Part shown: one piece after another, positions 19,327-57,744 of the stretch
Layout of the letters: the number at the start of each line of letters is the position of its first letter
How positions within the stretch are numbered: position 1 is the first letter of the stretch
Assembly: GCA_002269645.1 (NCBI GenBank)
Contig: NIVC01000342.1
Location: forward strand, 186,001-250,000
DNA from: Macrostomum lignano
Lineage: Eukaryota
DNA length: 64,000 nt
Direction: 5' to 3'
Position numbers and translations under genes: made by a program
The notes under the pieces: model-generated
What the model was told of the DNA's origin: nothing
Seen by the model: only the letters and a program-made list of their open reading frames with translations
The model's database searches: none

Positions 19327-19372
19327 GACGTAAATTTTGAACGACTCGTTGAAAGGATTTCGGCGTTTCGTT

Positions 19373-19392
19373 ATCCCACTTAGCTGACACCA
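19373..19392 (-). promoter_or_regulatory. Primer binding site, tRNA-Leu-like
   Basis: TGGTGTCAG(CT)AAGTGGGAT lies 1 nt after the 5' LTR. It equals the complement of a tRNA-Leu 3' end (TGGTGTCAGAAGTGGGAT) plus a 2-nt insertion. Confidence 0.8.
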
Positions 19393-19393
19393 A

Positions 19394-24129: not shown

Positions 24130-25194
24130 TTAGAACGCAGCCTGCACCGCTGCCCCAATGCGACAAACAGCCCAGCTGGCCACCTGCGGCTGCTGGCCCG
24201 CATAGAGATGCACCGCATCGCTCTTCCAGTCGCCAATGGCTTTGATATCCTCGATCGCGATGCCTGAACGCCTGGCGAAGGTGGCGCCGCCTCGGCGCAG
24301 GCTGTGCATTGAAAAGCGGTTTCTCGGAAGGCCAGCCTGGTGAAAAAGCTGGGACAACTCGCGCTGGACATGCGCTGCAGTTAAGCTCATCCAGCTTCCT
24401 GCTGACTGCAGGGTCGAGAACAGAGGCTGCGAAGGAGGTGCAATGTCCAGTGAATTCCGGCTGAAATGATGATGGAGCGCACAAAGCGGACACAGCGGAG
24501 CAGTCGCACTCTTGCAGATGCAGGGCAGAAGAACGACATGACGGCGCTCGCCGAATTGATTCGTCTTGGACAGGCGAACAGAAATCCAAGCCTCCTTGAG
24601 GCCCAGGCGAAGATCGCTGATTAGCACCGCCGTGCCGACGTTTGCCTGGCTGAGAGAGCAAAGATTGGCCGCCCGCAGCATGGCCCACCAGCCGGCTAAG
24701 ATGAGACTCCACAGAGCAGCTCCAAGGCCGGTCTGCAGCTGTAGGCAGCGCCGCAGTCGCAGAAGATGACTCGGCCCCAGCGCAGCCTTGCGGCGAACGG
24801 GAATTGCGGCCAGCAGCCGCTTCGCACCTCGAAGAGCCAAGCGCACGAGTCCAGAGTCTATCGTAACCGGAGAGTCGCTGAGTCGCAAAAGAGTGGCGAT
24901 CGAGCTGATGTATGCCTGCAGGTTCGATTGTCGCGACAGGCGATGGTGCATGAGGAAGTTTATGAATTGGCAAATCTGAGTTGGAGTCGGCTTCAGAGCT
25001 TTGATCTTTGCCTCACTGCAGAAAGCGAGCCACGTCCTCCATTTGCTTTCCAGCGACCGCAGCGTCGCCGCTGCGAAGGCGGCGCGAACTAGAGGGAGCA
25101 GCTCGGTTGGCAGCCCAAAGGAGACGGCACCTGAAAAACAGGGTGGAGGCGGAAGCAGGACCCAGCGCATGCGAAGCAAATTCAGAGGGATCAA
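24130..25194 (-). CDS. Tyrosine recombinase of DIRS/Ngaro type
   Basis: AMLRAANL (Arg), SKTNQFG, HSLRRGGAT and GDWKSDAVHLY catalytic motifs, with an N-terminal SAM-like helical domain. Confidence 0.95.
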   Translation of the reverse strand: MIPLNLLRMRWVLLPPPPCFSGAVSFGLPTELLPLVRAAFAAATLRSLESKWRTWLAFCSEAKIKALKPTPTQICQFINFLMHHRLSRQSNLQAYISSIATLLRLSDSPVTIDSGLVRLALRGAKRLLAAIPVRRKAALGPSHLLRLRRCLQLQTGLGAALWSLILAGWWAMLRAANLCSLSQANVGTAVLISDLRLGLKEAWISVRLSKTNQFGERRHVVLLPCICKSATAPLCPLCALHHHFSRNSLDIAPPSQPLFSTLQSAGSWMSLTAAHVQRELSQLFHQAGLPRNRFSMHSLRRGGATFARRSGIAIEDIKAIGDWKSDAVHLYAGQQPQVASWAVCRIGAAVQAAF

Positions 25195-26587
25195 TCAACA
25201 AATGACCGTAGAAACGAGAGGCAAAATCAATCAGAGCAGCGCCGCCCGTCAGGAGACGAGAGGCGGGGTCAGCGAGGAACTGGCGGCAACCGGGCATGTA
25301 AAAGACCTTGAAAGTGATCTGCTGCTGCATGCAGACAAGCCCAGCCTGCATCAGAAGGTCATTCACGACACGATGGGACACTTAGCAGAGCCACGGTTGA
25401 GCATGCCGACAGCTGCTTGGTTGTCGCTGTAGAAGACCACCTGGGCCTGATGAAGCTGGTCACGAAACCGCAGCAGAGTGAGAGGAGCGATAGCCGCCTC
25501 CTTGTAATTGATGTGCAGATCGGCCAAACGGCCGTCCAAGTCCGAGGAAAAATCAACGAAAAACCAATCGCGGAAGCAGCAACTGCTGAGAATAGCGGCG
25601 CCGCCACTGATGCAGACGTCAGTTTCCACGGCCAAGGCGTCGGAGAAGTTGGGCCAGATGAGACGATCGTGGTAACACCTGACGGCCGATTCCCACCATT
25701 GAAGAAGATGCCGCAAACTCTCGCAAATGCGCACTCGACGATTTTCACGACTAAGACTCTCGGTAAACTCGATGATGGGGCGAAGGAACATGCGAATTTG
25801 TCTTTGCACCTGGCAAAACCAGCTCAACTTTCCGGTGAGGCGACGCAAGAAGGAAGCAGAGACTTGTCTAGCGGCAAGACAGTCAGTGAGCAACTGACGC
25901 AGCTCATGCAGCTTTTCTGGAGGCAGAGACATGACTCCGATGTCTGTCTGGATACGAACACCGAGGAAGACCATGTCCTGACAAGGCGGGGTGCACTTTT
26001 TGCGGTTGATCTCGAAGCCAAGATGCTCCAGAAGACTTAGCAGGTGATCATAGGCCTTGAAGCAATCTCTGTAGGTAGCGGCAGTGACAGCAAAGTCATC
26101 CAGATAGTTCACAACAGCGGTATAGCCGTCCTTGACCATGAAGCGATGAATGGCTTGAGAGACACGGTGAAAGCTAGGAACAGAGCCGGCAGCACCCATG
26201 GGAAGGCGTCGGTCTTCCATGTAAGTAACGTGATCGTCGCCGGAAAACTTTAACTTCAGACCAAGAAGAGGCCAGCAGCTGGGGTGGCAGGCAATGGACC
26301 AATACGCCGAGGAAATATCAACTTTGGCCATGAAGTGACCTGGCCGAAGAAGACGCACGAAATCCTCGACAGACGCAAAACGCAGCTTGCGGTCGGCGGT
26401 GAAACAGTCGTTGAGAGACGCATTATGCGGGACGGAGCAGTCGTGAATGAGTCTGACGCCACCAGAAGATTTGCGAATAGCCCCAAGCGGGCTCACCAAG
26501 CTTGGCGGATCTGGCACAACCACGACTCTACCCCTGCGAATTTCTTCAAGCAGCAGGCATTCGACCTCCTGCCTGAACTCCTCCACC
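25013..26587 (-). pseudogene. DIRS-type RT/RNase H, frameshifted by a 5-bp duplication at 25364-25373 and 5'-truncated at the Penelope junction
   Basis: SPLGAIRKSSGGVRLIHDCS, KVDISSAY, YLDDF, ETDVC, INYKE and YSDNQA; continues as ...YMPGCRQFLADPASR in another frame. Confidence 0.92.
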
Positions 26588-26669
26588 GACGCTCTGGTCC
26601 ACAGAGCAGTTAAATTGGTAGACAACACCTGCACGCAGAGTACAAGGAACACGCGACTTTAATCTGCTA

Positions 26670-34607: not shown

Positions 34608-34907
34608 AGTTCTTTTTTAGATAGCAAGAGACTTTATAAACTACTCGTATAAGTAGTAGAACACGCTGCTTGCTGTTTTATTAGTGATATTAGATCTTTG
34701 GAAAAATCAACCGCAGCTCAAAGGCTTATCATAATAGATTTCTAGTATTATGGATTAAAATTGAGTTTAATATAGGCATTTTGCTTGAACTTTTTTGCCG
34801 AAATTTACACCTGTATTTTTGTTATATTATCGATTTTTCTGGTGCACTGTAGCATAAAAAATTATTTTTACTCTTTAGAAGTGCTCTCTGTGTGATTCTA
34901 GATTTAC

Positions 34908-37750
34908 TGGGTGTGTGGAACAGGTGTGAGATTGTTGAGTACTGGTGTGTGTGGAACAGGTGTGAGATTGTTGAGTACTGGTGTGTGGAACAGGTGTGAG
35001 ATTGTTGAGTACTGGTGTGTGGAACAGGTGTGAGATTGTTGAGTACTTGTGTGTGTAGAACAGGTGTGAGATTGTTGAGTACTGGTGTGTGTGGAACAGG
35101 TGTGAGATTGTTGAGTACTGGTGTGTGGAACAGGTGTGAGATTGTTGAGTACTGGTGTGTGTGGAACAGGTGTGAGATTGTTGAGTACTGGTGTGTGGAA
35201 CAGGTGTGAGATTGTTGAGTACTGGTGTGTGTGGAACAGGTGTGAGATTGTTGAGTACTGGTGTGTGGAACAGGTGTGAGATTGTTGAGTACTGGTGTGT
35301 GTGGAACAGGTGTGAGATTGTTGAGTACTGGTGTGTGTGGAACAGGTGTGAGATTGTTGAGTACTGGTGTGTGGAACAGGTGTGAGATTGTTGAGTACTG
35401 GTGTGTGTGGAACAGGTGTGAGATTGTTGAGTACTGGTGTGTGTGGAACAGGTGTGAGATTGTTGAGTACTGGTGTGTGTGGAATAGGTGTGAGATTGTT
35501 GAGTACTGGTGTGTAGAACAGGTGTGAGATTGTTGAGTACTGGTGTGTGGAACAGGTGTGAGATTGTTGAGTACTGGTGTGTAGAACAGGTGTGAGATTG
35601 TTGAGTACTGGTGTGTGGAACAGGTGTGAGATTGTTGAGTACTGGTGTGTGGAACAGGTGTGAGATTGTTGAGTACTGGTGTGTGGAACAGGTGTGAGAT
35701 TGTTGAGTACTGGTGTGTGGAACAGGTGTGAGATTGTTGAGTACTTGTGTGTGTGGAACAGGTGTGAGATTGTTGAGTACTGGTGTGTGGAACAGGTGTG
35801 AGATTGTTGAGTACTGGTGTGTGTGGAATAGGTGTGAGATTGTTGAGTACTTGTGTGTGTGGAACAGGTGTGAGATTGTTGAGTACTGGTGTGTGTGGAA
35901 CAGGTGTGAGATTGTTGAGTACTGGTGTGTGGAACAGGTGTGAGATTGTTGAGTACTTGTGTGTGTGGAACAGGTGTGAGATTGTTGAGTACTGGTGTGT
36001 AGAACAGGTGTGAGATTGTTGAGTACTGGTGTGTAGAACAGGTGTGAGATTGTTGAGTACTGGTGTGTGGAACAGGTGTGAGATTGTTGAGTACTGGTGT
36101 GTGGAACAGGTGTGAGATTGTTGAGTACTGGTGTGTAGAACAGGTGTGAGATTGTTGAGTACTTGTGTGTGTGGAACAGGTGTGAGATTGTTGAGTACTG
36201 GTGTGTGTGGAACAGGTGTGAGATTGTTGAGTACTGGTGTGTGGAACAGGTGTGAGATTGTTGAGTACTTGTGTGTGTGGAACAGGTGTGAGATTGTTGA
36301 GTACTGGTGTGTGTGGAACAGGTGTGAGATTGTTGAGTACTGGTGTGTGTGGAACAGGTGTGAGATTGTTGAGTACTGGTGTGTGTGGAACAGGTGTGAG
36401 ATTGTTGAGTACTGGTGTGTGGAACAGGTGTGAGATTGTTGAGTACTGGTGTGTGTGGAACAGGTGTGAGATTGTTGAGTACTGGTGTGTGTGGAACAGG
36501 TGTGAGATTGTTGAGTACTGGTGTGTGGAACAGGTGTGAGATTGTTGAGTACTTGTGTGTGTGGAACAGGTGTGAGATTGTTGAGTACTTGTGTGTGTGG
36601 AACAGGTGTGAGATTGTTGAGTACTTGTGTGTGTGGAACAGGTGTGAGATTGTTGAGTACTGGTGTGTGGAACAGGTGTGAGATTGTTGAGTACTGGTGT
36701 GTGGAACAGGTGTGAGATTGTTGAGTACTTGTGTGTGTGGAACAGGTGTGAGATTGTTGAGTACTGGTGTGTGGAACAGGTGTGAGATTGTTGAGTACTG
36801 GTGTGTGTGGAACAGGTGTGAGATTGTTGAGTACTGGTGTGTGGAACAGGTGTGAGATTGTTGAGTACTGTGTGTGGAACAGGTGTGAGATTGTTGAGTA
36901 CTGGTGTGTGGAACAGGTTTGAGATTGTTGAGTACTTGTGTGTGTGGAACAGGTGTGAGATTGTTGAGTACTGGTGTGTGGAACAGGTGTGAGATTGTTG
37001 AGTACTTGTGTGTGTGGAACAGGTGTGAGATTGTTGAGTACACTTGTGTGGAACAGGTGTGAGATTGTTGAGTACTTGTGTGTGTGGAACAGGTGTGAGA
37101 TTGTTGAGTACTGGTGTGTGGAACAGGTGTGAGATTGTTGAGTACTTGTGTGTGTGGAACAGGTGTGAGATTGTTGAGTACTGGTGTGTGTGGAACAGGT
37201 GTGAGATTGTTGAGTACTGGTGTGTGGAACAGGTGTGAGATTGTTGAGTACTGGTGTGTGTGGAACAGGTGTGAGATTGTTGAGTACTGGTGTGTGTGGA
37301 ACAGGTTTGAGATTGTTGAGTACTTGTGTGTGTGGAACAGGTGTGAGATTGTTGAGTACTGGTGTGTGGAACAGGTGTGAGATTGTTGAGTACTTGTGTG
37401 TGTGGAACAGGTGTGAGATTGTTGAGTACACTTGTGTGGAACAGGTGTGAGATTGTTGAGTACTTGTGTGTGTGGAACAGGTGTGAGATTGTTGAGTACT
37501 GGTGTGTGGAACAGGTGTGAGATTGTTGAGTACTTGTGTGTGTGGAACAGGTGTGAGATTGTTGAGTACTGGTGTGTGTGGAACAGGTGTGAGATTGTTG
37601 AGTACTGGTGTGTGTGGAACAGGTGTGAGATTGTTGAGTACTGGTGTGTGTGGAACAGGTGTGAGATTGTTGAGTACTGGTGTGTGTGGAACAGGTGTGA
37701 GATTGTTGAGTACTGGTGTGTGTGGAACAGGTGTGAGATTGTTGAGTACT
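34908..37750. repeat. 34/36-bp satellite (GGTGTGTG[TG]GAACAGGTGTGAGATTGTTGAGTACT)n, ~2.85 kb
   Basis: Tandem periodicity with GT dinucleotide length polymorphism. It explains all ORFs at 34822-37782. Confidence 0.98.
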
Positions 37751-38209
37751 TGAGTGTAAAAAATCAGGCATTTTGAGTACAATGAATATACATCATTTCT
37801 GTACTTACTATTTTAATTTGCAATAACTAAACTACTATATATATTTTTCTCTTATTCCTGGCGCTCCATAGTTTTGAAACCCAAGCCATTCTTAACCAAC
37901 ACTGCGTTACCCTTCCAGAATGCGAAATAGGCTAACACTGCAGGGCAGATTTTACAAGTCGTTATAAATTTACATCGCTACATACGAGTATATTTATTAG
38001 TTATATTTGTACACTCGAACATTCGCACAAGCATTCACAATCATTAGTTTCCTTACAAGAACAAGAGTGAGCAACGTTATTCTTTTAACAAATTTAACAA
38101 ATGTTATCATTTCTGTATACCTGTTATTTTTCCTAATTATAAATAGTGCTTTCTTTGTTGCTTTATTTAATAGATGTGCTTTATTATCTTCTGTTGTGAG
38201 AGAATCCCA

Positions 38210-40807: not shown

Positions 40808-41131
40808 ATGTCACGCCCCCAGTTCACTCAGTCCGTACTGCTTGACGCCGACGAAAACATAGCCGACTTGCTTAGGAAATTCCCCGACCTGGGCAAAGAT
40901 GGCGGCACAGTTAGCAAGGATGAACTGCGCGACGCTCTCGACGCTATGGGCGCCAAAGTGTCCGGTTTCCAGCTGCGAGACCTGCTGAACGATCTAATGC
41001 CAACCAAGACTTCGTTCGATAAGGATGCGCTGGTCACGCTGTATTGCCAGGTGAAAATGAAGCAGCCCGATCGAGATGTCAAAGATTCTATGAAGAAGCT
41101 GCATAATCCCGAGGATAAACAGTCAATGAAG
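40808..41131 (+). CDS. PLS: Plastin/fimbrin exon 1 (EF-hand headpiece)
   Basis: ATG start, EF-hand-like DLGKDGGTVSKDEL, AAG|gtgagc donor in phase 0. Confidence 0.85.
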
Positions 41132-41624
41132 GTGAGCTTCAGCTACAAATATATTTTGTTAAAAATTAAAACCTTTTTTCTTTCGTTTTTAATTTTAGTA
41201 CTTTTTAGCACTAATATGCAAAAATGTACTCTCTCTTTTTTGCTAATGATCATAATTTAATAATTAAGCAGTTAAATTTCAAACAAATTTCAGTTGATAT
41301 TTAGATGATCATGATCATATCTTAGATTGATTTTGTTAAGTCAAAAGAAAAGATTTGATCATTAAATAGAAAATATTTTCTATTTTATACTACTAAAAGT
41401 AGAGTAATTCATTAGAAAAGAAAGTATAGTTTTAATGATTTTTATCTGTTAATTTTATATATTACCTATACCTATTAGGCCATGGTAAAGCTAATTGTTT
41501 ATAATATATAAACCATCATTAATTTAAATGTTGACAAAATTAAGTTTAAATGTTGATATGTTGCTTATCTTATACATTACCTCACTCTTATTTTATGATC
41601 TTGTTCCTAGTGTCATTTACCAGA

Positions 41625-42457
41625 AGGACCTGGGGTAGTGACCAAGGACCTGTGGTAGTGACCAAGGACCTGTGGTAGTGACCATGACCAAGGACATGAG
41701 GTAGCAGCCAGAGGACCTAGGGTAGTGACTAAGGACCTGGGGACCTGAGGTAGTGGCCAAACAACCTGGGGTAGTGTCCAAGGACCTGGGATATTGATAA
41801 ACGACCTGGGGTAGTGACCTAGGACCTGGGATAGTGATAAAGGACCTTGGGTAGTGGGGTAGTTACAAGGACCTGAGGTAGCAGCCAGAGGACCTGGGGT
41901 AGTGGCAAGGACCTGAGGTAGCAGCCAGAGGACCTGGGGTAGTGGCAAGGACCTAGGAAGTGACCAAGGACCCGGGGTAGCAGCCAGAGGACCTGGGTAG
42001 TGACCAAGGACCTGAGGTAGCAGCCAGAGGACCTGGGGTAGTGGCAAGGACCTAGGAAGTGACCAAGGACCCGGGGTAGCAGCCAGAGGACCTGGGTAGT
42101 GACCAAGGACCTGGGGTAGCAGCCAGAGGACCTGGGTAGTGACCAAGGACCCGGGGTAGCAGCCAGAGGACCTGGGTAGTGACCAAGGACCTGAGGTAGC
42201 AGCCAGAGGACCTGGGGTAGTGGCAAGGACCTGAGGTAGCAGCCAGAGGACCTGGGGTAGTGGCAAGGACCTAGGAAGTGACCAAGGACCCGGGGTAGCA
42301 GCCAGAGGACCTGGGTAGTGACCAAGGACCTGGGGTAGCAGCCAGAGGACCTGGGTAGTGACCAAGGACCTGGGGTAGTGACCAAGGACCTGGGGTAGTG
42401 ACCAAGGACCTGGGGTAGTGACCAAGGACCTGAGGTAGCAGCCAGAGGACCTGGGAT
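41625..42457. repeat. 20/21-bp minisatellite (GGACCTGGGGTAGTGACCAA / GGACCTGAGGTAGCAGCCAGA), intronic
   Basis: Tandem periodicity with higher-order alternation. Confidence 0.95.
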
Positions 42458-43529
42458 AGCTAAAGCTTAGCACTGAATGCTGCATGTAAAATAGCGACTA
42501 GTTGCATCTTCCAAGTCGAAAGCTGAAGACTCAAAAAGTCCTTTTTTAATTGTTTTATTCGAATAATGCAAAAGATCGACGCCACGCATTCCAATTCAAA
42601 ATTGGGTATCTGAGAAACAAAAGCAAAGCGGTTAAAGCATGCTTTGAGAAGGGGCCAACAATAAATTGCGCACCTAAGAGCTGTTCTGATTCGGCTCGGA
42701 ATTCGAACAACAGAGAACGAGCTCTCTGCTCAACTCGCCAATGCACATACGTTGAGATCGTTTTCACTTTCGAGTCTTGAGTCACTCCTTTCCAAATACT
42801 ATCATACATGAGTATGTCATAATCTCCGCTTACTAAGATTGATATTCGCAAATGCGATGAAGGGTAACTTAATTGTGCGCGTACTCTTTATAGCCTCGAT
42901 ATATACTCTCGTAATTGGCGTGAAATTTTTATTAATCTTACAGAGAAATCTCTTTCTCTCTATAGCTACAGCTATACTCGTACAGCGCATGGGTGGACTG
43001 CAGCCTGCAGGCACTGAATGCAATGCCAGCTTATACATAGTATAAATAATAAGAGCTAGAATTCAACAACTGAGGCTACACAGGGCTTGTTCCCCGTGTG
43101 TGTGTGTGTGTATATATATATACGAGGTAATATCTTATCGCTGCGCGAAGTTCATCGCTCATTAATAAGAGGCAGGCAAGGCATCAAGCAAGTCAAGCCA
43201 GCTAGTAACTAAATAGTATTATACAAATCGGACTGAAATGACCTCTGTGCAGGACTATTTGCAGGCTCATGGTCGAAGGCGATCGTCTTTTAATCATGGC
43301 GATTTGCAGGTAACCATATGAAACTCTGAGCTCTACTAGGTATACTACGAGTATTATTAGACTTATTTTGGTATTCAATAGCTTTAATGCTGTTATTAAA
43401 ATTATCTGCAATAACAAACAATATTCAGTTAGAATTTAATATGTTTGATCTCTATAGTTTCTTTTCTATGATGCGTTTTACACCTTTACCCTTCAATACT
43501 TTTCTGTAGTATTGGACTTAGACATTCGG

Positions 43530-44160
43530 AGACACGAACCTCAGGGCCTCAGGGATGTGCTATCAGGCCTTTGGAGACACGAACCTCAGAGCCTCAGGGG
43601 TGCGCTATCAGCCCTTCAGAGACACGAACCTCAGAGCCTCAGGGATGCGCTATCAGCCCTTCAGAGACACGAACCTCAGAGCCTCAGGGATGCGCTATCA
43701 GCCCTTCAGAGACACGAACCTCGGAGCCTCAGGGATGCGCTATCAGCCCTCAGAGACACGAACCTCAGAGCCTCAGGGATGCGCTATCAGGCCTTCAGAG
43801 ACACGAACCTCAGGGCCTCAGGGATGCGCTATCAGCCCTTCAGAGACACGAACCTCAGGGCCTCAGGGATGCGCTATCAGCCCTTCAGAGACACGAACCT
43901 CAGGGCCTCAGGGATGCGCTATCAGCCCTTCAGAGACACGAACCTCAGGGCCTCAGGGATGCGCTATCAGTCATTTAGAGACTCTAACCCCAAGGCCTCA
44001 GGGATGCGCTATCAGTCATTTAGAGACTCTAACCCCAAGGCCTCAGGGATGCGCTATCAGTCATTTAGAGACTCTAACCCCAAGGCCTCAGGGATGCTCT
44101 ATCAGTCATTCAGAGACTAACCCCAAGTCCTCAGGGATGCGCTATAAGCCCTTAAGAGGC
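43530..44160. repeat. 45-bp minisatellite (GAGACACGAACCTCAGAGCCTCAGGGATGCGCTATCAGCCCTTCA)n, intronic
   Basis: Tandem periodicity. Confidence 0.95.
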
Positions 44161-44721
44161 AAACCCTAGCATTGAATGCAGTTTGGATTGAAGCAATCTG
44201 AAGAGAAAATTGCAACAGATAGGCTTGGCTATAGTTCCTACAGTGGGTTCACGTGTTTGTAATTGTGCGAGCGTTAGTGCTAAACAGACTTGGCTCATTC
44301 CTGTCCCTCAGTCTAAAGCTGCAGTGGTGCTAAACACACAGGAAATGCAGTCAAGTAAGCATTCGCTCGCATCGAATTATAAAGTTTTAATTTGCAACTT
44401 TCATTTTAAGATTAATAACACAGTTACAATGCAATGCATGCCGGTATTTTATTTTGTTGCGCGTCCTCCGCTTGACCTGAAACACGTGCATGGTCAGTTA
44501 GTCACGTGCGGATTATAAGGCGCTTCGGCTTGGAGTTTTAACTAGAGCGGGATTTTATCAAGTTGAATAAAGCTAAATAAATAAATATTGCAATTGCATG
44601 CCACAGTAACAAACATTTTGAATGCTTGTCCCATACGAAGTTATGTTATGTTTTGCTGAGTTTTCAGTACATTTTTATATTGCTTTAGTCATGCAAACTT
44701 TGACTTTGTGGGAATCGGTAT

Positions 44722-45270
44722 CAGAATTGTGGAATTCAGCATTAGAATTGCGGAGTTCAGAATTAGAATTGTGGAATTCAGCATTAGAATTGCGGAGTTC
44801 AGAATTGGAATTGTGGAATTCAGCATTAGAATTGCGGAGTTCAGAATTAGAATTGTGGAATTCAGCATTAGAATTGCGGAGTTCAGAATTAGAATTGTGG
44901 AATTCAGCATTAGAATTGCGGAGTTCAGAATTAGAATTGTGGAATTCAGCATTAGAATTGCGGAGTTCAGAATTAGAATTGTGGAATTCAGCATTAGAAT
45001 TGCGGAGTTCAGAATTGGAATTGTGGAATTCAGCATTAGAATTGCGGAGTTCAGAATTAGAATTGTGGAATTCAGCATTAGAATTGCGGACTTCAGAATT
45101 AGAATTGTGGAATTCAGCATTAGAATTGCGGAGTTCAGAATTAGAATTGTGGAGTTCAGAATTAGAATTGTGGAATTCAGCATTAGAATTGCGGAGTTCA
45201 GAATTAGAATTGTGGAATTCAGCATTAGAATTGCGGAGTTCAGCATTAGAATTGTGGAATTCAGCATTTC
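44722..45270. repeat. 42-bp (2x21) minisatellite (AGAATTGTGGAATTCAGCATTAGAATTGCGGAGTTCAGAATT)n, intronic
   Basis: Tandem periodicity. Confidence 0.96.
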
Positions 45271-45321
45271 ATTAGAATTGCAAACACTAATAAAACTGAA
45301 ACACTCTAATAATGCGCACAG

Positions 45322-46653
45322 AAAATCAGCGGCACCGGCAATGAGTGGACGCTGCACACCATCGGCGACTCGGAGCGACGCGGCTACGCCGGCTGGATCA
45401 ACAAGATGCTGGAGAAGGACCCGGACCTCTCCCACCTGCTGCCCGTGGATGGCAACACTGACGAGCTGTACGAGAAACTGGGCGACGGCCTGGTGCTGTG
45501 CAAGCTGATCAACAGCGCCGTGCCGGGCACCATCCACGAGAAGGCCATGAACAAGCTGGCCCAGCTGAAGGGCGGCTCTGCCGGATTCCGGATGCACGAG
45601 AATCTGGTGCTTGCAGTGAACTCGGCCGAGTCAATCGGCTGCTGCATTGTCAATATTGGCGCCAACGACATCAAAGAGTGCCGGCCGCACATTATCCTGG
45701 GCCTAATCTGGCAGATCATTCGCATCGGCCTAATGAAGGACATCACCCTGTCGCAGCACAAGGAGCTGGCGGCCCTGCTGCTGCCAGGCGAGACTCTCGA
45801 GGATCTGAAACAGCTGAGTCCCGAGGAGCTGCTGCTGCGCTGGGTAAACTACCAGCTAGCCAAGGCCGGCACGGACAAGCGGGTGCACAACTTCAAGGAT
45901 GACATCATGGACTCGGAGGCGTACGCGCATCTGTTGTCGCAGATCGCCCCGGTTGACAAGCGCTCCGAGATGCGCAGCCCGCAGGAGGTCCTGGCCAGCG
46001 CGGACCGGCTGAAACGGGCCGACGGTGTCCTGTCCAACGCCGACAAGCTGGACGCCGCGGTCTTTGTGGTGTCGGAGGACATCGCCTTCGCCAACGAGCC
46101 CGGACGAAATCGGGAGAAGCTGAACATGGCCTTTGTGGCCAACCTGTTCAATAACTACCCAGCCATGGAGGCCGTCCAGGACGTGGAAGTGGAAGTAATC
46201 GAGGAGACGCTCGAAGAGAAGACTTTCCGCAACTGGATGAACAGTCTGGGCGTGTCGCCGTTTGTGAAGGACCTGTACTCTGACCTGCGCAACGGCCTCA
46301 TCCTGCTGACGCTGATGGACCACATCAAGCCTGGCGTGGTGCCCTGGTCAAAGGTGTGCAAAACCTTCGTGCCTAATAAGAAGCTGTTCCAGTGGCAGGC
46401 CAACTGCAACTACGTTATCGAGTGCGGCCGCAAGATCGGCCTGCCCATGACCAACATCGGCGCCGAGGACATTCGCGACGGCGACAGGAAGCTCACCCTC
46501 GGCCTGGTGTTCCAGATGATGCGCGCCTACACCCTGTCACTGCTCATGCAGCTCACCGGCGGCACCAGGAAGATTGACGATGACGAGATTATCCAGTGGG
46601 CCAATCAGAAACTGGAGGCCGCCGGCAAGGCCGCCCGGGTGAAGAGCTTCAAG
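45322..46653 (+). CDS. PLS: Plastin/fimbrin exon 2 (CH1-CH3 and start of CH4)
   Basis: cacag acceptor; WINKMLEKDPDL, GDGLVLCKLIN, PHIILGLIWQII, LSPEELLLRWVNYQL, EEKTFRNWMNSLG and KLTLGLVFQMMRAY; AAG|gtgaga donor. Confidence 0.97.
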
Positions 46654-46689
46654 GTGAGACTGGCTGTGCCTGCCCGTGTCTGCTTGTCT

Positions 46690-46749
46690 GTCGTGTCTGT
46701 CTGTCTGTCTTAGTGTCTTAGTGTGTGTCTGTCTGTCTGTCTGTCTTAG

Positions 46750-46842
<93 letters not shown>

Positions 46843-46865
46843 TAATGTCTGTCTGTCTGTCTGCC
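46690..46865. repeat. (CTGT)n microsatellite
   Basis: Visible tetranucleotide run. Confidence 0.97.
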
Positions 46866-47624
46866 TTCGTATGGCTGTGCTTGTCTGTATTCGCCTTTAT
46901 CTGTCTGCTGCCCGCTTTTTTCTGTCTGTCTGTATCTAAACCCCTAGGTCTGCAGTAGTGATAGCTTGCAAGGAAATGATATACGAACTATTTTTGTGCT
47001 TCCTTATTGATGCTTGAAAGTTTCGCCTAGCAGACGCAAGTTCGGCATCCTTGAGTTTGCTGCTTCTGTGCGAGTACAGCAGCCACCCCTCTCCTCTACT
47101 ACCGCCCCTCCCTCCAGCGGCGGCCCCTTGGAAACTTCTGCAGTCAGAATAGTTTTTTTTGTTAGTCTGCTTGTTGAGTGAAGGCTCCGTCTTGACCTGT
47201 GCCGCACTATTTTTAGCCATTGTTTACGGGGAATGTGAGTCTGAGAGGGGGGGGGGGTGACAGTTAAAAAATGCAACAGCTAAAAACTCGCCAAGTTTCC
47301 ATATTTAGAAAATTGTTTGCTCTCTTCAAAAACATTTCACCCCTGCGCAATTTGATTGCCATGTTTGGAGATGCTAATTTTATTCTATCGCTTCTTTGAA
47401 CAGCAGTTTTCTGCTTCTTAGCGGCATTGGTAATTAAAACCTACCATTTTAGGCTTAGAAAATTCTGTGGCAAAATCGAAACTTGAAAATTTCGTCATTT
47501 CCATTTGCTGTCCCAATGATGTCTATTTTGTAGATTTTGCCTTATCACCCTACTATTAGTAGGCTAATGTTAATTTACTGGGACTATTTTTGGGCGTTTT
47601 ATAAAAATTTAGAAGTGTTCATTA

Positions 47625-47900
47625 TGAGCAACAGGATTAGAAGTGCTCATTATCAGCAACAGGATTAGGGGTGTTCATTATTAGCAACAGGATTAGGGGT
47701 GTTCATTATGAGTAACAGGATTAGGGGTGTTCATTATCAGCAACAGGATTAGGGGTGTTCATTATTAGCAACAGGATTAGAGGGTGTTCATTATCAGCAA
47801 CAGGATTAGGAGTGTTCATTATGAGTAACAGGATTAGGGGTGTTCATTATCAGCAACAGGATTAGGAGAATTCATTATCAGCAACAGGATTAGGAGAATT
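47625..47900. repeat. 28-bp minisatellite (GTGTTCATTATCAGCAACAGGATTAGGG)n, intronic
   Basis: Tandem periodicity. Confidence 0.92.
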
Positions 47901-48020
47901 CAGTATTATTTAAGATTCATCCAGGACCATAGCTGATTGGGATCGAGTGCCCCTCAGATCCCCAGATTCTGAGACTACTAAACAAAGCACTGAACGCTGG
48001 ACAACTCCCACCCCTGCCAG

Positions 48021-48278
48021 GACCCGTCCCTGGCTGACGGCATGGTGATCCTTGAGCTGGCTGACGCCATCAAGCCAAAGACAGTGGACACCTCAATCGC
48101 AGCCGGCATGAAAGATCAGCTGGACAGGGCCCGGTTCATTCTCAGCAAGAGTCGCATGATTGGCGGCCGGATCTACGCTCTGCCAGAGCATGTGGTGCAG
48201 GTGAACAAGAACATGATCATGACCGTGTTCGCCTGTCTCATGATCCTCGACTTCCAGATCAACAAGCCCAGCGCTTGA
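48021..48278 (+). CDS. PLS: Plastin/fimbrin last exon (CH4); total protein ~637 aa
   Basis: ccctgccag acceptor; DPSLADG...SKSRMIGGRIYALPEHVVQVNKNMIMTVFACLM, then stop. Confidence 0.96.
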   Translation, partial: DPSLADGMVILELADAIKPKTVDTSIAAGMKDQLDRARFILSKSRMIGGRIYALPEHVVQVNKNMIMTVFACLMILDFQINKPSA

Positions 48279-51427: not shown

Positions 51428-52380
51428 CACACAGATCCGAAATGCATGACCCCACACCCGGACCTCATGACCACAGATCCGAAATGCATGACCCCACACC
51501 CGGACCTCATGACCACAGATCCCAAATGCATGACCCCACACCCGGACCTCATGACCACAGATCCCAAATGCATGACCCCACACCCGGACCTCATGACCAC
51601 AGATCCCAAATGCATGACCCCACACCCGGACCTCATGACCACAGATCCGAAATGCATGACCCCACACCCGGACCTCATGACCACAGATCCGAAATGCATG
51701 ACCCCACACTCGGACCTCATGACCACAGATCCGAAATGCATGACCCCCACACTCGGACCTCATGACCACAGATCCGAAATGCATGACCCCCACACCCGGA
51801 TCTCATGACCACAGATCCCAAATGCATGACCCCCCACACCCGGATCTCATGACCACAGATCCCAAATGCATGACCCCCACACCCGGATCTCATGACCACA
51901 GATCCCAAATGCATGACCCCCACACCCGGATCTCATGACCACAGATCATAAATGCATGACCCCACACTCGGACCTCATGACCACAGATCCCAGATGCATG
52001 ATCCCCACACCCGGATCTCATGACCACAGATCCCAAATGCATGACCCCCACACCCGGATCTCATGACCACAGATCATAAATGCATGACCCCTTATCACAG
52101 ATCGCATGACCACAAATCATAAATGCATGACCCCTCATCACAGATCGCATGACCACAAATCATAAATGCATGACCCCTCATCACAGATCGCATGACCACA
52201 AATCATAAATGCATGACCCTCATCACAGATCGCATGACCACAAATCATAAATGCATGACCCCCACACCCGTATCTCATGACCACAAATCATAAATGCATG
52301 ACCCCCACACCCGTATCTCATGACCACAGATCATAAATGCATGACCCCACATCACAGATCGCATGACCACAGATCCATAT
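51428..52380. repeat. 42-bp minisatellite (CATGACCACAGATCCGAAATGCATGACCCCACACCCGGACCT)n filling the ARF intron
   Basis: Tandem periodicity. Confidence 0.96.
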
Positions 52381-52569: not shown

Positions 52570-52881
<312 letters not shown>

Positions 52882-53100
52882 TTAGGGGAATTCAATAGTT
52901 TAACACAAAATATAAAACTCTATGAGCATCTTAAACTTCAACAATTGGAGAGTTTTCCAACTCTCCATAGTCAAGAGTTCCTTCTCACAATATTCTATCA
53001 TCATTGTAATACAAGCACTTTAGTCTAGAAGTCTTTGACCTTTGCTCATTAATATTTCATTTAGTTAATTAGAATAATAAGGTAAAGCCAAGTCTGACAA

Positions 53101-53249
53101 AAATGTTGTTACTAGCTCTAGGATCAATCAATCAGTAAATATGAAAAGATCCTCTTAATATAGTAACCAAGACTGGTATGCCCAATTTGTGCACACCTTG
53201 CAATTATTTCAAACAATAAATTTGCAAAGCCGGCTTGCTAATTGGGCTA
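53101..53249 (-). ncRNA. H/ACA box snoRNA, paralogue 1
   Basis: Hairpin, H box AUACCA (53179-53174), hairpin, then ACA (53106-53104) plus 3 nt. Stems covary with paralogues 2 and 3. Confidence 0.82.
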
Positions 53250-53477
53250 TTCATTAGTTTATTAGCCATAAATACTGAGCTAGAGCAGAGATTAGAGAAC
53301 ATAGTTGAAAAAAGCCATTGAAAAATGAATTCTATTTGTTTCTCTAAAGAACTAACGAATGTTGTGAGGGTCCAGAATAATCTTTTTTATAATTAGATTA
53401 TAAAAATTTATCTTCTTTATTGTTTTAAATGCCTTTTCAATTTGAGAAGAATAATAAGATGTACTAAAAAAATGTTT

Positions 53478-53619
53478 AAATGTTGTTACCAGCTCTAGGA
53501 TCAATCAATTACTAAAAAATGAAAGATCCTCTTAATATGGCAACTAGGTTGGTATGCCCAGTTTGTGCACACCTTGCAAACAATAGAATATTTGCAAAGC
53601 CGGCTTACTCCCTGGGCTA
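53478..53619 (-). ncRNA. H/ACA box snoRNA, paralogue 2
   Basis: Same architecture. The G.U pair in stem GUUGCCA/UGGUAAC forms only on the minus strand. Confidence 0.82.
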
Positions 53620-53777
53620 ATTAGTTTGTTTATTAGTCCTAAAAATTAATACTGATAAGATACATATATATAAAATGATATATATTGATACATTTATACT
53701 GAGTTCATATAATATGCTGTTGTAATTTTTATACATAGTCAAAGTAATTGTATGGATTCTATTTTTTATATTAATAG

Positions 53778-53926
53778 TAGTGTTGTTGCCAGCTCTTGGA
53801 TTAATTTTTGAAACAATTATAAAAAAATCCTCTTAATATGGCAACTAGGGTTGGTATGCCCAATTTGTGCACACTTTGCAAATATAAAAACAATAGATTT
53901 GCAAAGCCGGCTTACTTGTTGGGCTA
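53778..53926 (-). ncRNA. H/ACA box snoRNA, paralogue 3
   Basis: Same architecture, with compensatory GGAUU/AAUCC versus GGAUC/GAUCC. Confidence 0.82.
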
Positions 53927-55290
53927 TTTGATAAGTATGAACATTTATAATTTCAATGGCTTTCATTATTGAAAGAAAACTGATAGAAAACTGAAATTAT
54001 CCATTTCTAAAAATCCAATTAATTAAAAAATCTTTATATGTTTAAGAAAATTATTTCTGCTGACTATCTCATTTTATTTATATTCTAACAATGAGAATTA
54101 TACTTAGAATAAAAAATTATTTTTGTTTAAATATACTTTAAATGTCTATAACAACCTTTCAAATTAAAGTTGCACCCTATTGGAATTAATGTTGAAAACT
54201 TGCGGATGTGCACTTTAGAAAGAGTCAAATTATTTTATTGCACTTTTGGATTATTAGAAATCATTTTTTGTCAAAATCAAAATTTGCTAACTTTCCAAAA
54301 TCATAATTGAATTTTTTGAAATCAAAATTCAGAAAAACAAAGTTTAGTATGACCAAAACTCACTTTTTTACTCTTGATTTACTGCTTATCCAAAACTAAA
54401 TACATAAATAGCACAAATTAGTTTTTATTTTAGCTACTCTTTTACACATTTCCAAAATTTTGATTTCTGAATTTTTTCAAAATCAAAATTCACTCTTAAA
54501 AATTCCAAATTTTTGGAAAATCAAAATCAAAATTTTGAAATAACTCTAAGCATTATATGAGAAATTACAAGTGTATAAGTCCCTTCCACAAAGGTATTAG
54601 ACCCTCTTTGATGTATATTTAATTGCTAGAGCAGCAGCCAGCAGGAAAGGGCAGCATGCTTGCACTGCGCTTAAGAAAAATTTCAAAAGTACGCCAGATG
54701 CCATCTGCAATTTTACAACTTTTTTCCTATAGGGTAGTTGCATAATCAATATAAATACTCATGCAAAACTCTTGTACTTCTAATTAATTTTTTTAATATC
54801 ATTTTAATATCTAGTTTAGATAGTAGTCTAGCTTATATTGTACTAAGTACAAGTAGAATTGTACTTGTACTTGTAGAACTTATAGATTATACTTGTACTA
54901 GAAAGAAAATCCATCTTTGGTTATGGTATGCCATTAAAATGTAAATTTTTTATGTTTTGAAATGGTCATTAACTTATTTAACCCAAAGCGATTATTCAAA
55001 AAAGTTTTTAAAGATACCAAATTACATAATACAAGTACATTAGTATTTAATATAAATAATAAAACTTAATTGAGAATCTGCTAAATTATGCATAGTCCTT
55101 ACATATATATATATATATATATTAACATGTACATGGACTTGATTAACCATCTGTTAGTGCAAAAAATCTGGGAAAGATAGTAAAGATCACTGGGAAAGGT
55201 CCAACTAAAATGCTTATACAAAGACCAAATTGGCAGCCAAAATGACTTTTGCACAAATATTAGTAGACAATGTAGCAGATAGCAGATGAA

Positions 55291-55648
55291 GGGGGCTGTA
55301 ACCTTGCGGTAGCGAAGCTGCTTTGGTATGCCAGCAAGCCAGGCTCGATTCCAAATGCAGTCACATTCATTTGGGGCTGAATTGGAATCTTGGCTTGGCT
55401 ATGCTTGTGCAATTAATGGCCTTGAGAGCCAACCCCCCAAGGCGCAGTGAAGTGAAGTGTATATGCCTAACAATAATATAAAGTTAGAGCCGCTGTACAC
55501 TCCTGTGTGTGCCTGCGTATGTATCCGCATGCTTGTATGCCTGCTCAGGGGAGTTGGCAGAATGGGCAGTAATGCCTTTTGCCAGTGTGTGCCAATGTTG
55601 CTTAAAGTGTGCCAGGGTGCATACAACCCGCCTGCCTCTAAAAAAAAA
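55291..55648 (+). mobile_element. tRNA-headed SINE, same family as 109-480
   Basis: Co-linear similarity to 109-480, including GGCTCGATTCC and a poly-A tail; A box degraded. Confidence 0.75.
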
Positions 55649-57744
55649 GTTTCAGATAAAATGACTATGAACTTATTATATATTATATATGTTTTATAAA
55701 TAATTTATAATTTGAAGTTTGTTTAAATTATAATGATTAGGAATAAAGCCTGACATTTATTATATGCACTTAATCTATTATATAAGTAGTTATAATGTTT
55801 TACAGTTTTGGCACTTTGCTATATAAAACAAAAGATAATATAAATTTGAATTTAGCATACGAGGGGTGTCCCAAAAGTTCCCGGAATGTCTAACGTAGCT
55901 CTTCAACAGAGCCATGAAATTTCACGCCCATGGTGTCAAATGAAAGGAAATTTTGTCACAAAGAATACAAAGTTAAAATCATGTTGATATCTTTTTTTAT
56001 TCAAGAGCTACAGCAAGAAACGTGCGCAAAGGTCAGGGGTAGTGTTACACAACCTCAACAATCTATGGCAATAATTTTTTCATCTTAAAAATAAAAGTGC
56101 TATATGAATCAATATAATATAATTATTAGCTTGTTATTGTTTGCAACATTAATATCAATCATAGAGTTGAGAGAATGAATTTCTGCTTTTCAAATCCTGA
56201 AGAATTTGGCTAGTTACCAATGGGCAACCAAAAATAGCAATTGGCTACTAGATTTTGAGCCTCAATTATAGTCCAGATCATGCTAGGTGCATGCCTAAAC
56301 AAAAATTGAATAATTATAAATGCACACCAAAAAATTGAGTGCAGGCCCATTCTCAAAACTACATTGGTGTTGCAACAATAAAGGACCTTTTTTACATTGT
56401 GACAATAAATAGGGGCCTAACCTTTTTTTAATTGTGTAATGGAACTTTTTTGGTAAATAAAATAATAAGGTTAATTTTTATGCAATTTTTTAGCAATACT
56501 ATTTACACCAAAAATTTATACATGCAAAGATTTGTTTAAATGCTTTATTACAAGCTTAAAAACATAGAAAGCTTAAAATTTATGCTTAAAATGAACTTTT
56601 TTCGATTTTACAATAACTTTGTATGATTCTATAAAGTGTACACTAGGTGTACATGCATACTATTTTCTTAGGAGTAATATAGGCCAACTATGCATGTTTA
56701 CTTTTGGTGTATAGGGTCAATGCATGCCTGAATTTTTGGGTATATACTATATGATCTAGAGTGTAGAGCCCTAAGGGCTAGTTGGCAACTAGATTTTTAA
56801 CCTTAAAAGACCTAGACTTAGAATCATATTTGTAATTATTTAATTTTTATTCTGGCGTATACCTAGCATGATATAGTCTATGGATTCTATAGTACATTTT
56901 GGCAATTTTAAATAAGTAAAGATTTTTTTATAAAAATATTAATATTTTTTATTTTTAAACCAAATAATTAGGCCTTAATAAGGTAAGCACTTTTAATGTT
57001 TATAATAACATAGTATATCTATTTTGTTATGAACAAAACTGAATTAAAAGTTTTCAAAATCTCATTGAAGTCCCTACTTTTAGATTTTGCTATATAGGCC
57101 CTATCTTAACTTGTTATATGCATGTTATATGCATGCCTATGGCGAAATCCAAAAGGTGGGATAAAATGGTAAAACAAATTTACAGACATTCAATGGAAAG
57201 TAATGTATCTAAAAAATGTTTTTGAAAGATAGATAGGTCTTTAGAAAATAGTTCTAGATAAAAACTATTGTTTTCATGCTTTATATTGTTGAATAAATAA
57301 GGAAAAAAACACAAAAAAGCATTTTAAAAGTCCGAGTTGACCAATTTGCAATTTTTTATTTTACTTTTTCATTATTAAACAATTAATTTTAAGACTTGTA
57401 GGCCTTAGAGAAGGCTAATTTTTTTACTACTTACAAAACAGAAAGTAATCTCTGTTTTACTTTTTATTCAATTCAAAAAGATGAAGTATTTCTAAGGATT
57501 TCAAAGTTTTTCTAAAACCATATAAACTCGCGAAAATTCATACTAATATAAAGTGCAAAGTTTGCCAGCAAACATCTTTCTCTTAAAGTAAATATATCGC
57601 TAATTCCTTGTTGCAAAATAATATTTAAGTTGTTTTCTTTCATTTAAATATCAACTTGCATAGTATTAGTATTTGTAATATGCCTATATTTAGACTTCAA
57701 AATTTTGGGCAAAAAATGGTACCACAAAATGTGAATCCAGCATC

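What the first reader, a model, noticed from the sequence alone, without database searches (positions are those of the whole stretch)
53101..53926. Cluster of three unannotated H/ACA snoRNA paralogues upstream of ARF, supported by covariation
Seen on the minus strand (the ARF strand): three ~145-nt copies with hairpin, AUACCA (H box, ANANNA), hairpin, ACA plus 3 nt. Apical loops vary freely while stems are preserved: GUUACUA/UAGUAAC, GUUGCCA/UGGUAAC and GUUGCCA/UGGCAAC; GGAUC/GAUCC versus GGAUU/AAUCC; GCCCAA/UUGGGC versus GCCCAG/CUGGGC. G.U wobbles work only on this strand, and pocket sequences are nearly invariant. Inference: the 3' pocket (AUUAAG ... AGAGC, about 14 nt from ACA) fits the conserved 18S segment GCUCU-UU-CUUGAU as I recall it from yeast and invertebrates. 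The 5' pocket (AAGCCG ... GUGCAC) predicts roughly GUGCAC-UN-CGGCUU, which I cannot assign, so it may be an orphan or snRNA guide. The cluster probably lies in ARF 5' UTR intron(s) or a polycistronic unit.
Basis: partly seen in the sequence, partly recalled or inferred. Interest (0 to 1): 0.8.

Follow-up and report, generated by a model that had tools for sequence, protein, structure and literature searches.

The report
Three flatworm H/ACA snoRNA gene copies
Just upstream of an ARF gene in the flatworm Macrostomum lignano lie three tandem copies of a previously undescribed but otherwise ordinary box H/ACA small nucleolar RNA, whose two guide pockets point at two conserved uridines of 18S ribosomal RNA.

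Summary
Three 140–147-nt paralogues lie on the minus strand at 53924–53778, 53617–53478 and 53247–53101. Each folds as hairpin, H box (AUACCA), hairpin, ACA.

Four stem pairs carry compensatory double changes. The loops vary freely, the pockets are nearly invariant, and similarity between copies stops at the predicted RNA ends.

The window is Macrostomum lignano contig NIVC01000342.1. A second, nearly identical ARF locus carries the same three copies. Nothing similar occurs in the other ~150 kb of M. lignano sequence I could search. No Rfam family reaches threshold.

The 3' pocket (AUUAAG/AGAGC) has one clear canonical site in eukaryotic rRNA: 18S GCUCU-UU-CUUGAU, the equivalent of human U1307. 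This position is not modified in human.

Its 5' strand (UAAGCCG) pairs with 18S CGGCUUA and places the equivalent of human Ψ1232 at the pocket top. This is the geometry of the SNORA70 5' pocket, the published predicted guide for Ψ1232. The other arm has no canonical partner, so this assignment is tentative.

How the cluster is expressed (intron, outron or own promoters) is untested.

Verdict: real, new members of a known kind, of moderate interest.

The parts
53778..53924 (-). H/ACA snoRNA copy A (147 nt, from first stem G to ACA+3). It is the most divergent copy: 3' upper stem GGAUU/AAUCC with an A.A at its base, and tail ACA-CUA.
   Evidence: (174.8 bits)
53478..53617 (-). H/ACA snoRNA copy B (140 nt), the most stable fold (-50 kcal/mol, z -5.2)
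   Evidence: (167.7 bits)
53101..53247 (-). H/ACA snoRNA copy C (147 nt), nearest to ARF. Its 3' lower stem carries two compensatory changes.
   Evidence: (185.5 bits)
53852..53857 (-). H box AUACCA of copy A (also 53550-53555 in B and 53174-53179 in C). It is invariant and fits ANANNA.
53781..53783 (-). ACA box of copy A (also 53481-53483 in B and 53104-53106 in C), one nucleotide after the 3' lower stem
53601..53611 (-). 5' pocket, 5' strand GGAGUAAGCCG of copy B (A: 53908-53918; C: 53231-53241). The core AAGCCG is invariant. It is complementary to 18S CGGCUU(A).
53562..53570 (-). 5' pocket, 3' strand GUGCACAAA of copy B (A: 53864-53872; C: 53186-53194). It is invariant, lies 15 nt from the H box, and has no canonical rRNA partner.
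53531..53537 (-). 3' pocket, 5' strand UAUUAAG of copy B (A: 53832-53838; C: 53154-53160). It is invariant and pairs with 18S CUUGAU.
53492..53496 (-). 3' pocket, 3' strand AGAGC of copy B (A: 53792-53796; C: 53115-53119). It is invariant, pairs with 18S GCUCU, and lies 13-14 nt from ACA.
52863..52873 (-). Pyrimidine-rich tract ending in CAGCAG, 5 nt upstream of the ARF ATG. It is a candidate cis- or SL trans-splice acceptor, which would place the cluster in an intron or outron.
   Evidence: sequence only; acceptor motif in PMC8629364
52600..52857 (-). ARF coding exon 1 (86 codons). Context, not part of the snoRNAs.
   Evidence: spliced product = PAA85185.1
51051..51341 (-). ARF coding exon 2, including the stop codon. 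Context.

Best explanation
The region holds three tandemly duplicated genes for one box H/ACA small nucleolar RNA of Macrostomum lignano. They are transcribed from the minus strand, the same strand as the downstream ARF gene.

Each RNA would assemble with the dyskerin/Cbf5-Nop10-Nhp2-Gar1 proteins. It would then use the internal loops of its two hairpins to position uridines of 18S rRNA for conversion to pseudouridine.

3' pocket: AGAGC pairs with 18S GCUCU and AUUAAG pairs with CUUGAU. This leaves UU unpaired 13-14 nt from ACA, so the target is the uridine equivalent to human 18S U1307.

5' pocket: it is of the SNORA70 type. UAAGCCG, directly under the upper stem, pairs with 18S CGGCUUA. This puts the uridine equivalent to human psi1232 at the pocket top, 15 nt from the H box.

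Shown here: the repeats, folds, boxes, covariation, pocket invariance, pocket-to-box distances and complementarity to conserved 18S segments. Inferred: expression, protein binding, the modifications themselves, and the mode of transcription and processing.
For: Architecture and boxes are in all copies. There are four compensatory pairs and 97% pairing, against 26-41% in slid-register controls. Pockets vary in 9% of columns against 59% for loops. Paralogue similarity ends at the predicted RNA termini.

The same three copies lie upstream of the near-identical second ARF locus on NIVC01000917/918. A covariance model finds no other copy in 152 kb of M. lignano DNA.

3' pocket: one 5+6-bp site per rRNA set, always the same 18S segment, in 6 of 7 SSU rRNAs. 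Nothing equal occurs in LSU, 5.8S, 5S, U1, U2, U4 or U5. Only 1.3-3% of shuffled guides find any such site. The cofold gives the canonical arrangement with UU unpaired for copies B and C. The segment is conserved in about 22 of 25 sampled 18S sequences that cover it.

5' pocket: CGGCUUA occurs once in every 18S, in GGAGCC-UG-CGGCUUAAUUUGAC, 16 of 16. The U two nucleotides upstream is human psi1232, 98% modified, and was detected in all vertebrates tested. The published predicted guide for psi1232 is the SNORA70 5' stem. Rfam's only match to this region is SNORA70 positions 10-49, exactly that pocket.
Against: No expression, protein-binding or modification data exist for any of this.

The 5' pocket has only 6-7 bp on one arm and one canonical pair on the other. 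A one-arm match of that quality is found by 30-47% of shuffled guides. The Rfam SNORA70 hit is not significant (16 bits, E = 2.6, copy B only). The invariant GUGCAC strand can instead pair inside the pocket.

The U1307-equivalent is not a known pseudouridine in human. With one mismatch allowed, a weaker second 18S site (GUUCU-UA-GUUGG) appears for the 3' pocket.

Copy A has a weaker 3' hairpin. In the other locus it is split by an insertion, so not all copies need be functional.
Confidence: 0.8

Rival explanations
1. It is a genuine H/ACA snoRNA, but only the 3' pocket guides a modification. The 5' hairpin is then an orphan or purely structural domain, or it guides a host-specific target I could not see, such as a variable rRNA region or an snRNA.
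For: The left arm GUGCACAAA has no canonical partner next to U1232 in any of 7 SSU rRNAs. No site conserved across rDNA sets pairs with both arms, even with one mismatch allowed. The right-arm match alone is not significant. RNAalifold pairs GU..GC of the 5' strand with GC..AC of the 3' strand inside the pocket, which could explain the invariance.
Against: The pocket geometry and the sequence of both strands next to the upper stem (UAAGCCG | stem | G) equal the SNORA70 consensus. That pocket is the published predicted guide for a real, highly modified and conserved pseudouridine at exactly the implied position. One intra-pocket pair is broken in copy C.
Confidence: 0.35
2. The copies are decaying tandem duplicates or pseudogenes of a snoRNA whose functional gene lies elsewhere. 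The cluster itself is not expressed.
For: Copy A is split by a retroposon-like insertion in the other locus and has an A.A at the base of its 3' upper stem. No promoter or host exon could be identified.
Against: Substitutions between paralogues are compensatory in stems and concentrated in loops. Boxes and pockets are invariant while the flanks are randomised. That is the signature of continued selection on each copy since the duplication.
Confidence: 0.08
3. The unit is a short dispersed repeat (MITE or SINE) or a cluster of microRNA precursor hairpins that only resembles an H/ACA RNA by chance.
For: The genome is very repeat-rich: many minisatellites and retroelements lie in the window. The whole genome could not be searched.
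Against: The unit has no terminal inverted repeats (5' GCCCAA versus 3' GUAACAACA) and no target-site duplications. No copy occurs outside the cluster in 152 kb. Two boxes sit at the correct places with correct pocket distances. The strand-specific G.U pairs and rRNA-complementary pockets are not expected of a transposon or a miRNA cluster.
Confidence: 0.04

Closest known systems
SNORA70 (U70; Rfam RF00156), vertebrate box H/ACA snoRNA
   Same: The 5' pocket has the same layout. Its 5' strand ends in UAAGCCG directly under the upper stem, the first unpaired 3'-strand base is G, and the pocket lies about 15 nt from the H box. The SNORA70 5' stem is the published predicted guide for 18S psi1232 (PMC4914119), the same uridine this pocket selects.
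   Different: The Rfam score is 16 bits against a threshold of 40, for one copy only. The right arm is shorter, 6-7 bp against at least 9 in the SNORA70 consensus. The stems are unrelated in sequence. The 3' pocket is different: SNORA70 is assigned to 18S psi1692, and this RNA's 3' pocket has no complementarity to that site. The family is described as vertebrate-restricted.
Multi-copy H/ACA snoRNA clusters of invertebrates (Drosophila Psi18S/Psi28S isoform clusters; from my own knowledge, not tested here)
   Same: Several sequence-variant isoforms of one pseudouridylation guide are arranged in tandem within a few hundred bases of each other, next to or inside a housekeeping host gene.
   Different: In Drosophila each isoform sits in its own intron of a host gene. 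Here no exons between the copies could be identified, and the downstream gene may be SL trans-spliced.
snR30/U17-type non-modifying H/ACA pocket (from my own knowledge)
   Same: That pocket binds two 18S segments that are not adjacent. Here both strands of the 5' pocket have complements in 18S separated by 18 nt: GCAC within GGGCAC, then CACCAGGAGUGGAGCCUG, then CGGCUUA.
   Different: The left complement is only 4 bp, well within chance. There is no evidence of a processing role.

Membership tests
box H/ACA snoRNA (class) | Hairpin-hinge-hairpin-tail secondary structure | tested here: met
   Single-sequence folds of all three copies, RNAalifold consensus and pair counts
box H/ACA snoRNA (class) | H box ANANNA in the hinge, immediately after the 5' hairpin | tested here: met
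   AUACCA is invariant in all copies in the window and in L003/L004
box H/ACA snoRNA (class) | ACA triplet 3 nt from the mature 3' end | tested here: inconclusive
   ACA is invariant one nucleotide after the 3' hairpin, and paralogue similarity ends about 3 nt later. The mature 3' end itself cannot be mapped without RNA data.
box H/ACA snoRNA (class) | Internal-loop pocket whose top lies 14-16 nt upstream of the H or ACA box | tested here: met
   15 nt for the 5' pocket and 13-14 nt for the 3' pocket
box H/ACA snoRNA (class) | Bipartite complementarity of the pocket strands to a target RNA, flanking an unpaired U-N | tested here: met
   Met for the 3' pocket: 5+6 bp around UU in conserved 18S. 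For the 5' pocket only one arm pairs, which is inconclusive.
box H/ACA snoRNA (class) | Stable ~130-150-nt RNA bound by dyskerin/Cbf5, Nop10, Nhp2 and Gar1; target uridine actually isomerised | not testable with these tools
   No expression, immunoprecipitation or modification data were accessible
SNORA70 (RF00156) | Score at or above the Rfam gathering threshold (40 bits) | tested here: not met
   No hit at gathering. 16.1 bits, E = 2.6, model positions 10-49, copy B only. No hit for copy A alone.
SNORA70 (RF00156) | 5' pocket guide for 18S psi1232 (AUUAAGCCG under the upper stem) | tested here: met
   UAAGCCG is in the same position and selects the U1232-equivalent. The arm is shorter than in the consensus.
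SNORA70 (RF00156) | 3' pocket guide for 18S psi1692 | tested here: not met
   The 3' pocket AUUAAG/AGAGC pairs with GCUCU-UU-CUUGAU, the U1307-equivalent. That the 1692 assignment belongs to SNORA70 is from my own knowledge.
scaRNA (Cajal-body H/ACA) | CAB box UGAG in the apical loops | tested here: not met
   None of the six loop sequences contains UGAG
MITE / dispersed repeat | Terminal inverted repeats, target-site duplication and many dispersed copies | tested here: not met
   The termini are not inverse-complementary. No copy lies outside the cluster in 152 kb. The whole genome was not searchable.

The most novel reading that the evidence does not exclude
The RNA combines an ancient SNORA70-type guide with a flatworm-specific guide. 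The first would push psi1232 and its guide back from vertebrates to the bilaterian ancestor. The second would create a pseudouridine at a universally conserved 18S position (the human U1307-equivalent) that is unmodified in human. In addition, the three genes may be released from the outron of an SL trans-spliced ARF pre-mRNA, a mode of snoRNA biogenesis I do not know to have been described in flatworms.
Probability: 0.25. Interest if true: 0.55.

Novelty: new member of a known kind. Interest (0 to 1): 0.35.

Why it matters
I found no published snoRNA annotation for Macrostomum lignano, a regeneration and stem-cell model. Rfam recognises nothing in this window.

These three genes give two concrete, testable predictions for pseudouridines in the head domain of flatworm 18S rRNA. 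One coincides with a conserved vertebrate site whose guide is so far only predicted. The other lies at a universally conserved position that is unmodified in human.

If confirmed, the SNORA70-type pocket in a platyhelminth would show that the guide for psi1232 is much older than its current "vertebrate" classification.

The paralogues also provide a seed covariance model for annotating this family in other flatworm genomes. Beyond that, the finding is a routine addition to a well-understood RNA class.

Tried and rejected
- Rfam at gathering threshold found nothing, on the whole window and on four other M. lignano loci. Relaxed scans gave only a non-significant SNORA70 hit and chance hits.
- The ARF paralogue loci L001/L002 (Mlig028163) carry no copy within 10 kb upstream.
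- I compared the window with the second Mlig023625 locus to look for selective conservation of the RNA bodies. This was uninformative: the whole locus is 96-99.6% identical, including the ARF intron and 1.5 kb downstream.
- I searched for a two-armed target of the 5' pocket in 18S, 5.8S, 28S, 5S, U1, U2, U4 and U5 of several eukaryotes. I used exact arms, one mismatch per arm and an opened stem base. No site recurs across rDNA sets. The 6-mer complement GUGCAU in 18S is within chance.
- The M. lignano SL exon plus donor (sequence from PMC8629364) has no complementarity to the 5' pocket.
- I tried to read the published SNORA70-psi1232 pairing. The figure is not held as text and no supplement is held for PMC4914119. 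A sequence search for human SNORA70 gave only primer fragments. My recollection that the human 3' strand reads GUGCAAU therefore remains unverified.
- The sigma-70 promoter and terminator scan is irrelevant to a eukaryote and was at background.
- A C box-like AUGAUGA between copy C and ARF has no downstream CUGA, so it was rejected as a C/D snoRNA (sequence inspection).
- Host 18S, 28S and snRNAs could not be obtained with the collections on hand.

Full report
**What is there.** On the minus strand of 53101-53926 lie three direct repeats of 140-147 nt: copy A 53924-53778, B 53617-53478 and C 53247-53101. Each copy, folded alone, gives two hairpins separated by a single-stranded hinge and followed by a short tail. 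The energies are -38.2, -50.0 and -41.7 kcal/mol, with z-scores of -3.2, -5.2 and -3.5 against dinucleotide shuffles. The plus strand folds less well: -37.7, -33.2 and -33.6 kcal/mol, z = -2.5, -1.3 and -2.1. The hinge begins with AUACCA (ANANNA) in every copy. The 3' hairpin is followed by A-ACA and three more bases. Each hairpin has a large internal loop. The loop top is 15 nt from the H box in the 5' hairpin and 13-14 nt from ACA in the 3' hairpin.

**Is it more than chance?** I counted pairs on an alignment of the four distinct full-length sequences: A, B, C and the C copy of a second locus. Of the cells in 29 pairs, 97.4% form standard pairs, against 26-41% when every 3' partner is slid by 1-3 columns. 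Four pairs change on both sides and stay paired:
- A-U to G-C in the 5' lower stem;
- G-C / G.U / A-U and C-G to U-A in the 3' lower stem;
- C-G to U-A in the 3' upper stem.

The covariation score exceeds all 500 shuffles. RNAalifold, given only the alignment, recovers the same four helices and the same four compensatory pairs. Variable columns among A, B and C make up 59% of the loops, 19% of the stems and 9% of the pockets. The three variable pocket columns all lie at the distal end of one strand. The RNA bodies are 78-80% identical between paralogues, whereas 100 nt on either side are no more alike than shuffled sequence. Similarity therefore starts and stops at the predicted RNA ends. Only B and C share short flanking motifs, about 30 nt upstream and CTTATTATTCT about 20 nt downstream. 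The sample is small and comes from one genome, so these numbers show consistency rather than strong statistics.

**Where it comes from.** The downstream gene has two coding exons (52857-52600 and 51341-51051, minus strand). Its spliced product is identical to PAA85185.1, an ARF of Macrostomum lignano (BOX15_Mlig023625g1). The window is part of contig NIVC01000342.1 of assembly GCA_002269645.1. A second locus, encoding Mlig023625g2 on NIVC01000917/918, also carries three copies in the same order upstream of ARF. That locus is 96-99.6% identical to the window across the ARF exons, the intron and 1.5 kb downstream. It is therefore a recent duplicate or allele, and its agreement says nothing about selection. 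Two more distant ARF paralogue loci have no copy. A covariance model built from the copies finds only the cluster members in 152 kb of M. lignano sequence.

**Known families.** No Rfam family reaches its gathering score anywhere in the window. The only H/ACA family seen in a relaxed scan is SNORA70: 16 bits, E = 2.6, model positions 10-49, aligned to the 5' pocket and upper stem of copy B. It does not reappear when copy A is scanned alone. A full-text search found no published snoRNA annotation for Macrostomum.

**Target of the 3' pocket.** I fetched complete rDNA units of several eukaryotes from metagenome contigs and annotated them with Rfam. I then scanned 18S, 5.8S, 28S, 5S, U1, U2, U4 and U5 for a uridine flanked by sequences complementary to the two pocket strands. 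The register in which the A-U pair closes the upper stem gives pocket strands AUUAAG and AGAGC. In that register there is exactly one site per rRNA set, always the same: 18S GCUCU-UU-CUUGAU, with 5+6 bp, in 6 of 7 SSU rRNAs. One of them reads CUUAAU, which is fully Watson-Crick. Only 1.3-3% of shuffled guides find any site of that quality in a full rRNA set. Cofolding gives the canonical three-way arrangement with UU unpaired for copies B and C. The segment is conserved in about 22 of the 25 18S fragments that cover it. The RNase fragments tabulated by Taoka et al. fix the human numbering as G1302-C-U-C-U1306, U1307-U1308, C1309-U-C-G-A-U1314. The predicted target is thus the equivalent of human U1307, which is absent from the complete human modification list. 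From memory it is also not a yeast or Drosophila site. With one mismatch allowed, a second conserved 18S candidate appears (GUUCU-UA-GUUGG). It has a mismatch at the pocket top and four G.U pairs, so it is clearly weaker.

**Target of the 5' pocket.** The right half does match. CGGCUUA occurs once in every 18S, in the invariant GGAGCC-UG-CGGCUUAAUUUGACUCAAC, 16 of 16. UAAGCCG lies directly under the upper stem, so the uridine placed in the pocket is the U two bases upstream. Taoka's fragments (CC-psi-G = 1230-1233; C-psi-UAAUU-psi-G = 1237-1245) show this U is human psi1232, 98% modified. It was found in all vertebrates tested. Jorjani et al. list the 5' stem of SNORA70 as the predicted guide for 18S-1232. 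The Rfam SNORA70 consensus has AUUAAGCCG in exactly this position. The flatworm 5' hairpin therefore looks like a SNORA70-type guide.

The weaknesses of this assignment are real:
- The arm is 7 bp in A and B, and 6 bp in window copy C.
- The other strand forms only one canonical pair next to U1232.
- A one-arm match of this quality is found by 30-47% of shuffled guides.
- The invariant GUGCAC can pair with GU..GC inside the pocket.

The M. lignano spliced-leader exon plus its donor (PMC8629364) is not a target. I put the U1232 assignment at roughly even odds.

**Expression context.** The cluster ends 235 nt upstream of a pyrimidine-rich tract ending in CAGCAG, which lies 5 nt before the ARF ATG. 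About 30% of M. lignano genes are SL trans-spliced at [T/C]TNCAG-type acceptors. The snoRNAs could therefore be excised from a 5'UTR intron or from the outron of the ARF pre-mRNA. TATA-like motifs lie 17-26 nt upstream of each copy (TATAAAT at 53949-53943 for A), but such motifs are common in this AT-rich DNA. None of this can be decided without RNA data.

**Copy status.** Copy A is the most divergent, with an A.A at the base of its 3' upper stem. In the second locus its 3' hairpin is split by a ~126-bp insert that ends in (GTT)n and is flanked by a 12-bp duplication of GTTGCCATATTA. This is the mark of a retroposon insertion. The copies are thus at least partly redundant.

**Verdict.** The observation and the main interpretation are correct. 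These are three paralogous, previously undescribed box H/ACA snoRNA genes: a new member of a known kind. What this stage adds is the organism, the second locus, a tested 18S target for the 3' pocket with its human numbering, and a tentative SNORA70-type assignment of the 5' pocket to the psi1232 site. Interest is moderate (0.35).

Noticed in passing
L003 8587-8712 (also L004 about 3371-3496): In the second ARF locus, the 3' hairpin of snoRNA copy A is interrupted by a ~126-bp GC-rich insert. The insert ends in a (GTT)n tail and is flanked by a 12-bp direct duplication of GTTGCCATATTA, so it looks like a SINE or retroposon insertion. The window's copy A is intact.
   Followed up: partly
window 54560-56100: The window has a ~1.5-kb insertion relative to the second locus, just upstream of the cluster. 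Part of it (about 55293-55420) is 87% identical to sequence upstream of an unrelated ARF paralogue (L001 364-589), so it is a dispersed repeat.
   Followed up: partly
window 52947-52966 (minus strand): A perfect 8-bp hairpin, GGAGAGUU-GGAA-AACUCUCC, lies about 90 nt upstream of the ARF start codon, between the snoRNA cluster and the putative splice acceptor. Its function is unknown.
   Followed up: no
window 51430-52376: The single ARF intron is almost entirely a 43-bp minisatellite (22 copies, 94% matches).
   Followed up: no
window 13398-19491 (minus strand): A Ty3/Gypsy-type LTR retrotransposon: a 1311-aa pol ORF with RT, RNase H, integrase zinc-binding and integrase core domains, preceded by a gag-like ORF.
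   Followed up: partly
window 24130-26652 (minus strand): A second retroelement: an RT-containing ORF (25363-26652), followed by a 354-aa ORF with no Pfam hit that overlaps another long ORF. It may be a DIRS-like element; I did not test for a tyrosine recombinase.
   Followed up: no
window 41051-48278 (plus strand): A fimbrin/plastin-like gene with multiple calponin-homology domains, convergent with ARF. It has a 435-aa exon at 45406-46713 and several minisatellites in its introns.
   Followed up: partly
window 34905-37757: A very large minisatellite (35-36-bp unit, about 81 copies, 95% matches) that creates spurious ORFs of up to 986 aa in three frames. Further arrays of 16-45-bp units lie across 28.7-33.1 kb, 38.5, 41.6-45.3, 47.6, 49.3 and 63.2 kb.
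   Followed up: no
L061 2810-4181: One metagenome rDNA contig fetched for the target scan carries U2, U1, U3, U4, U5 and 5S genes packed in the spacer between rRNA units, an unusual linked arrangement in some protist.
   Followed up: no
window 53071-53081 and 53448-53458 (minus strand): Copies B and C share an 11-nt motif, CTTATTATTCT, about 20 nt downstream of ACA+3. They also share about 30 nt upstream (CAGTATT...CTAATAAAC). These may be remnants of the duplication unit or processing or promoter signals.
   Followed up: no
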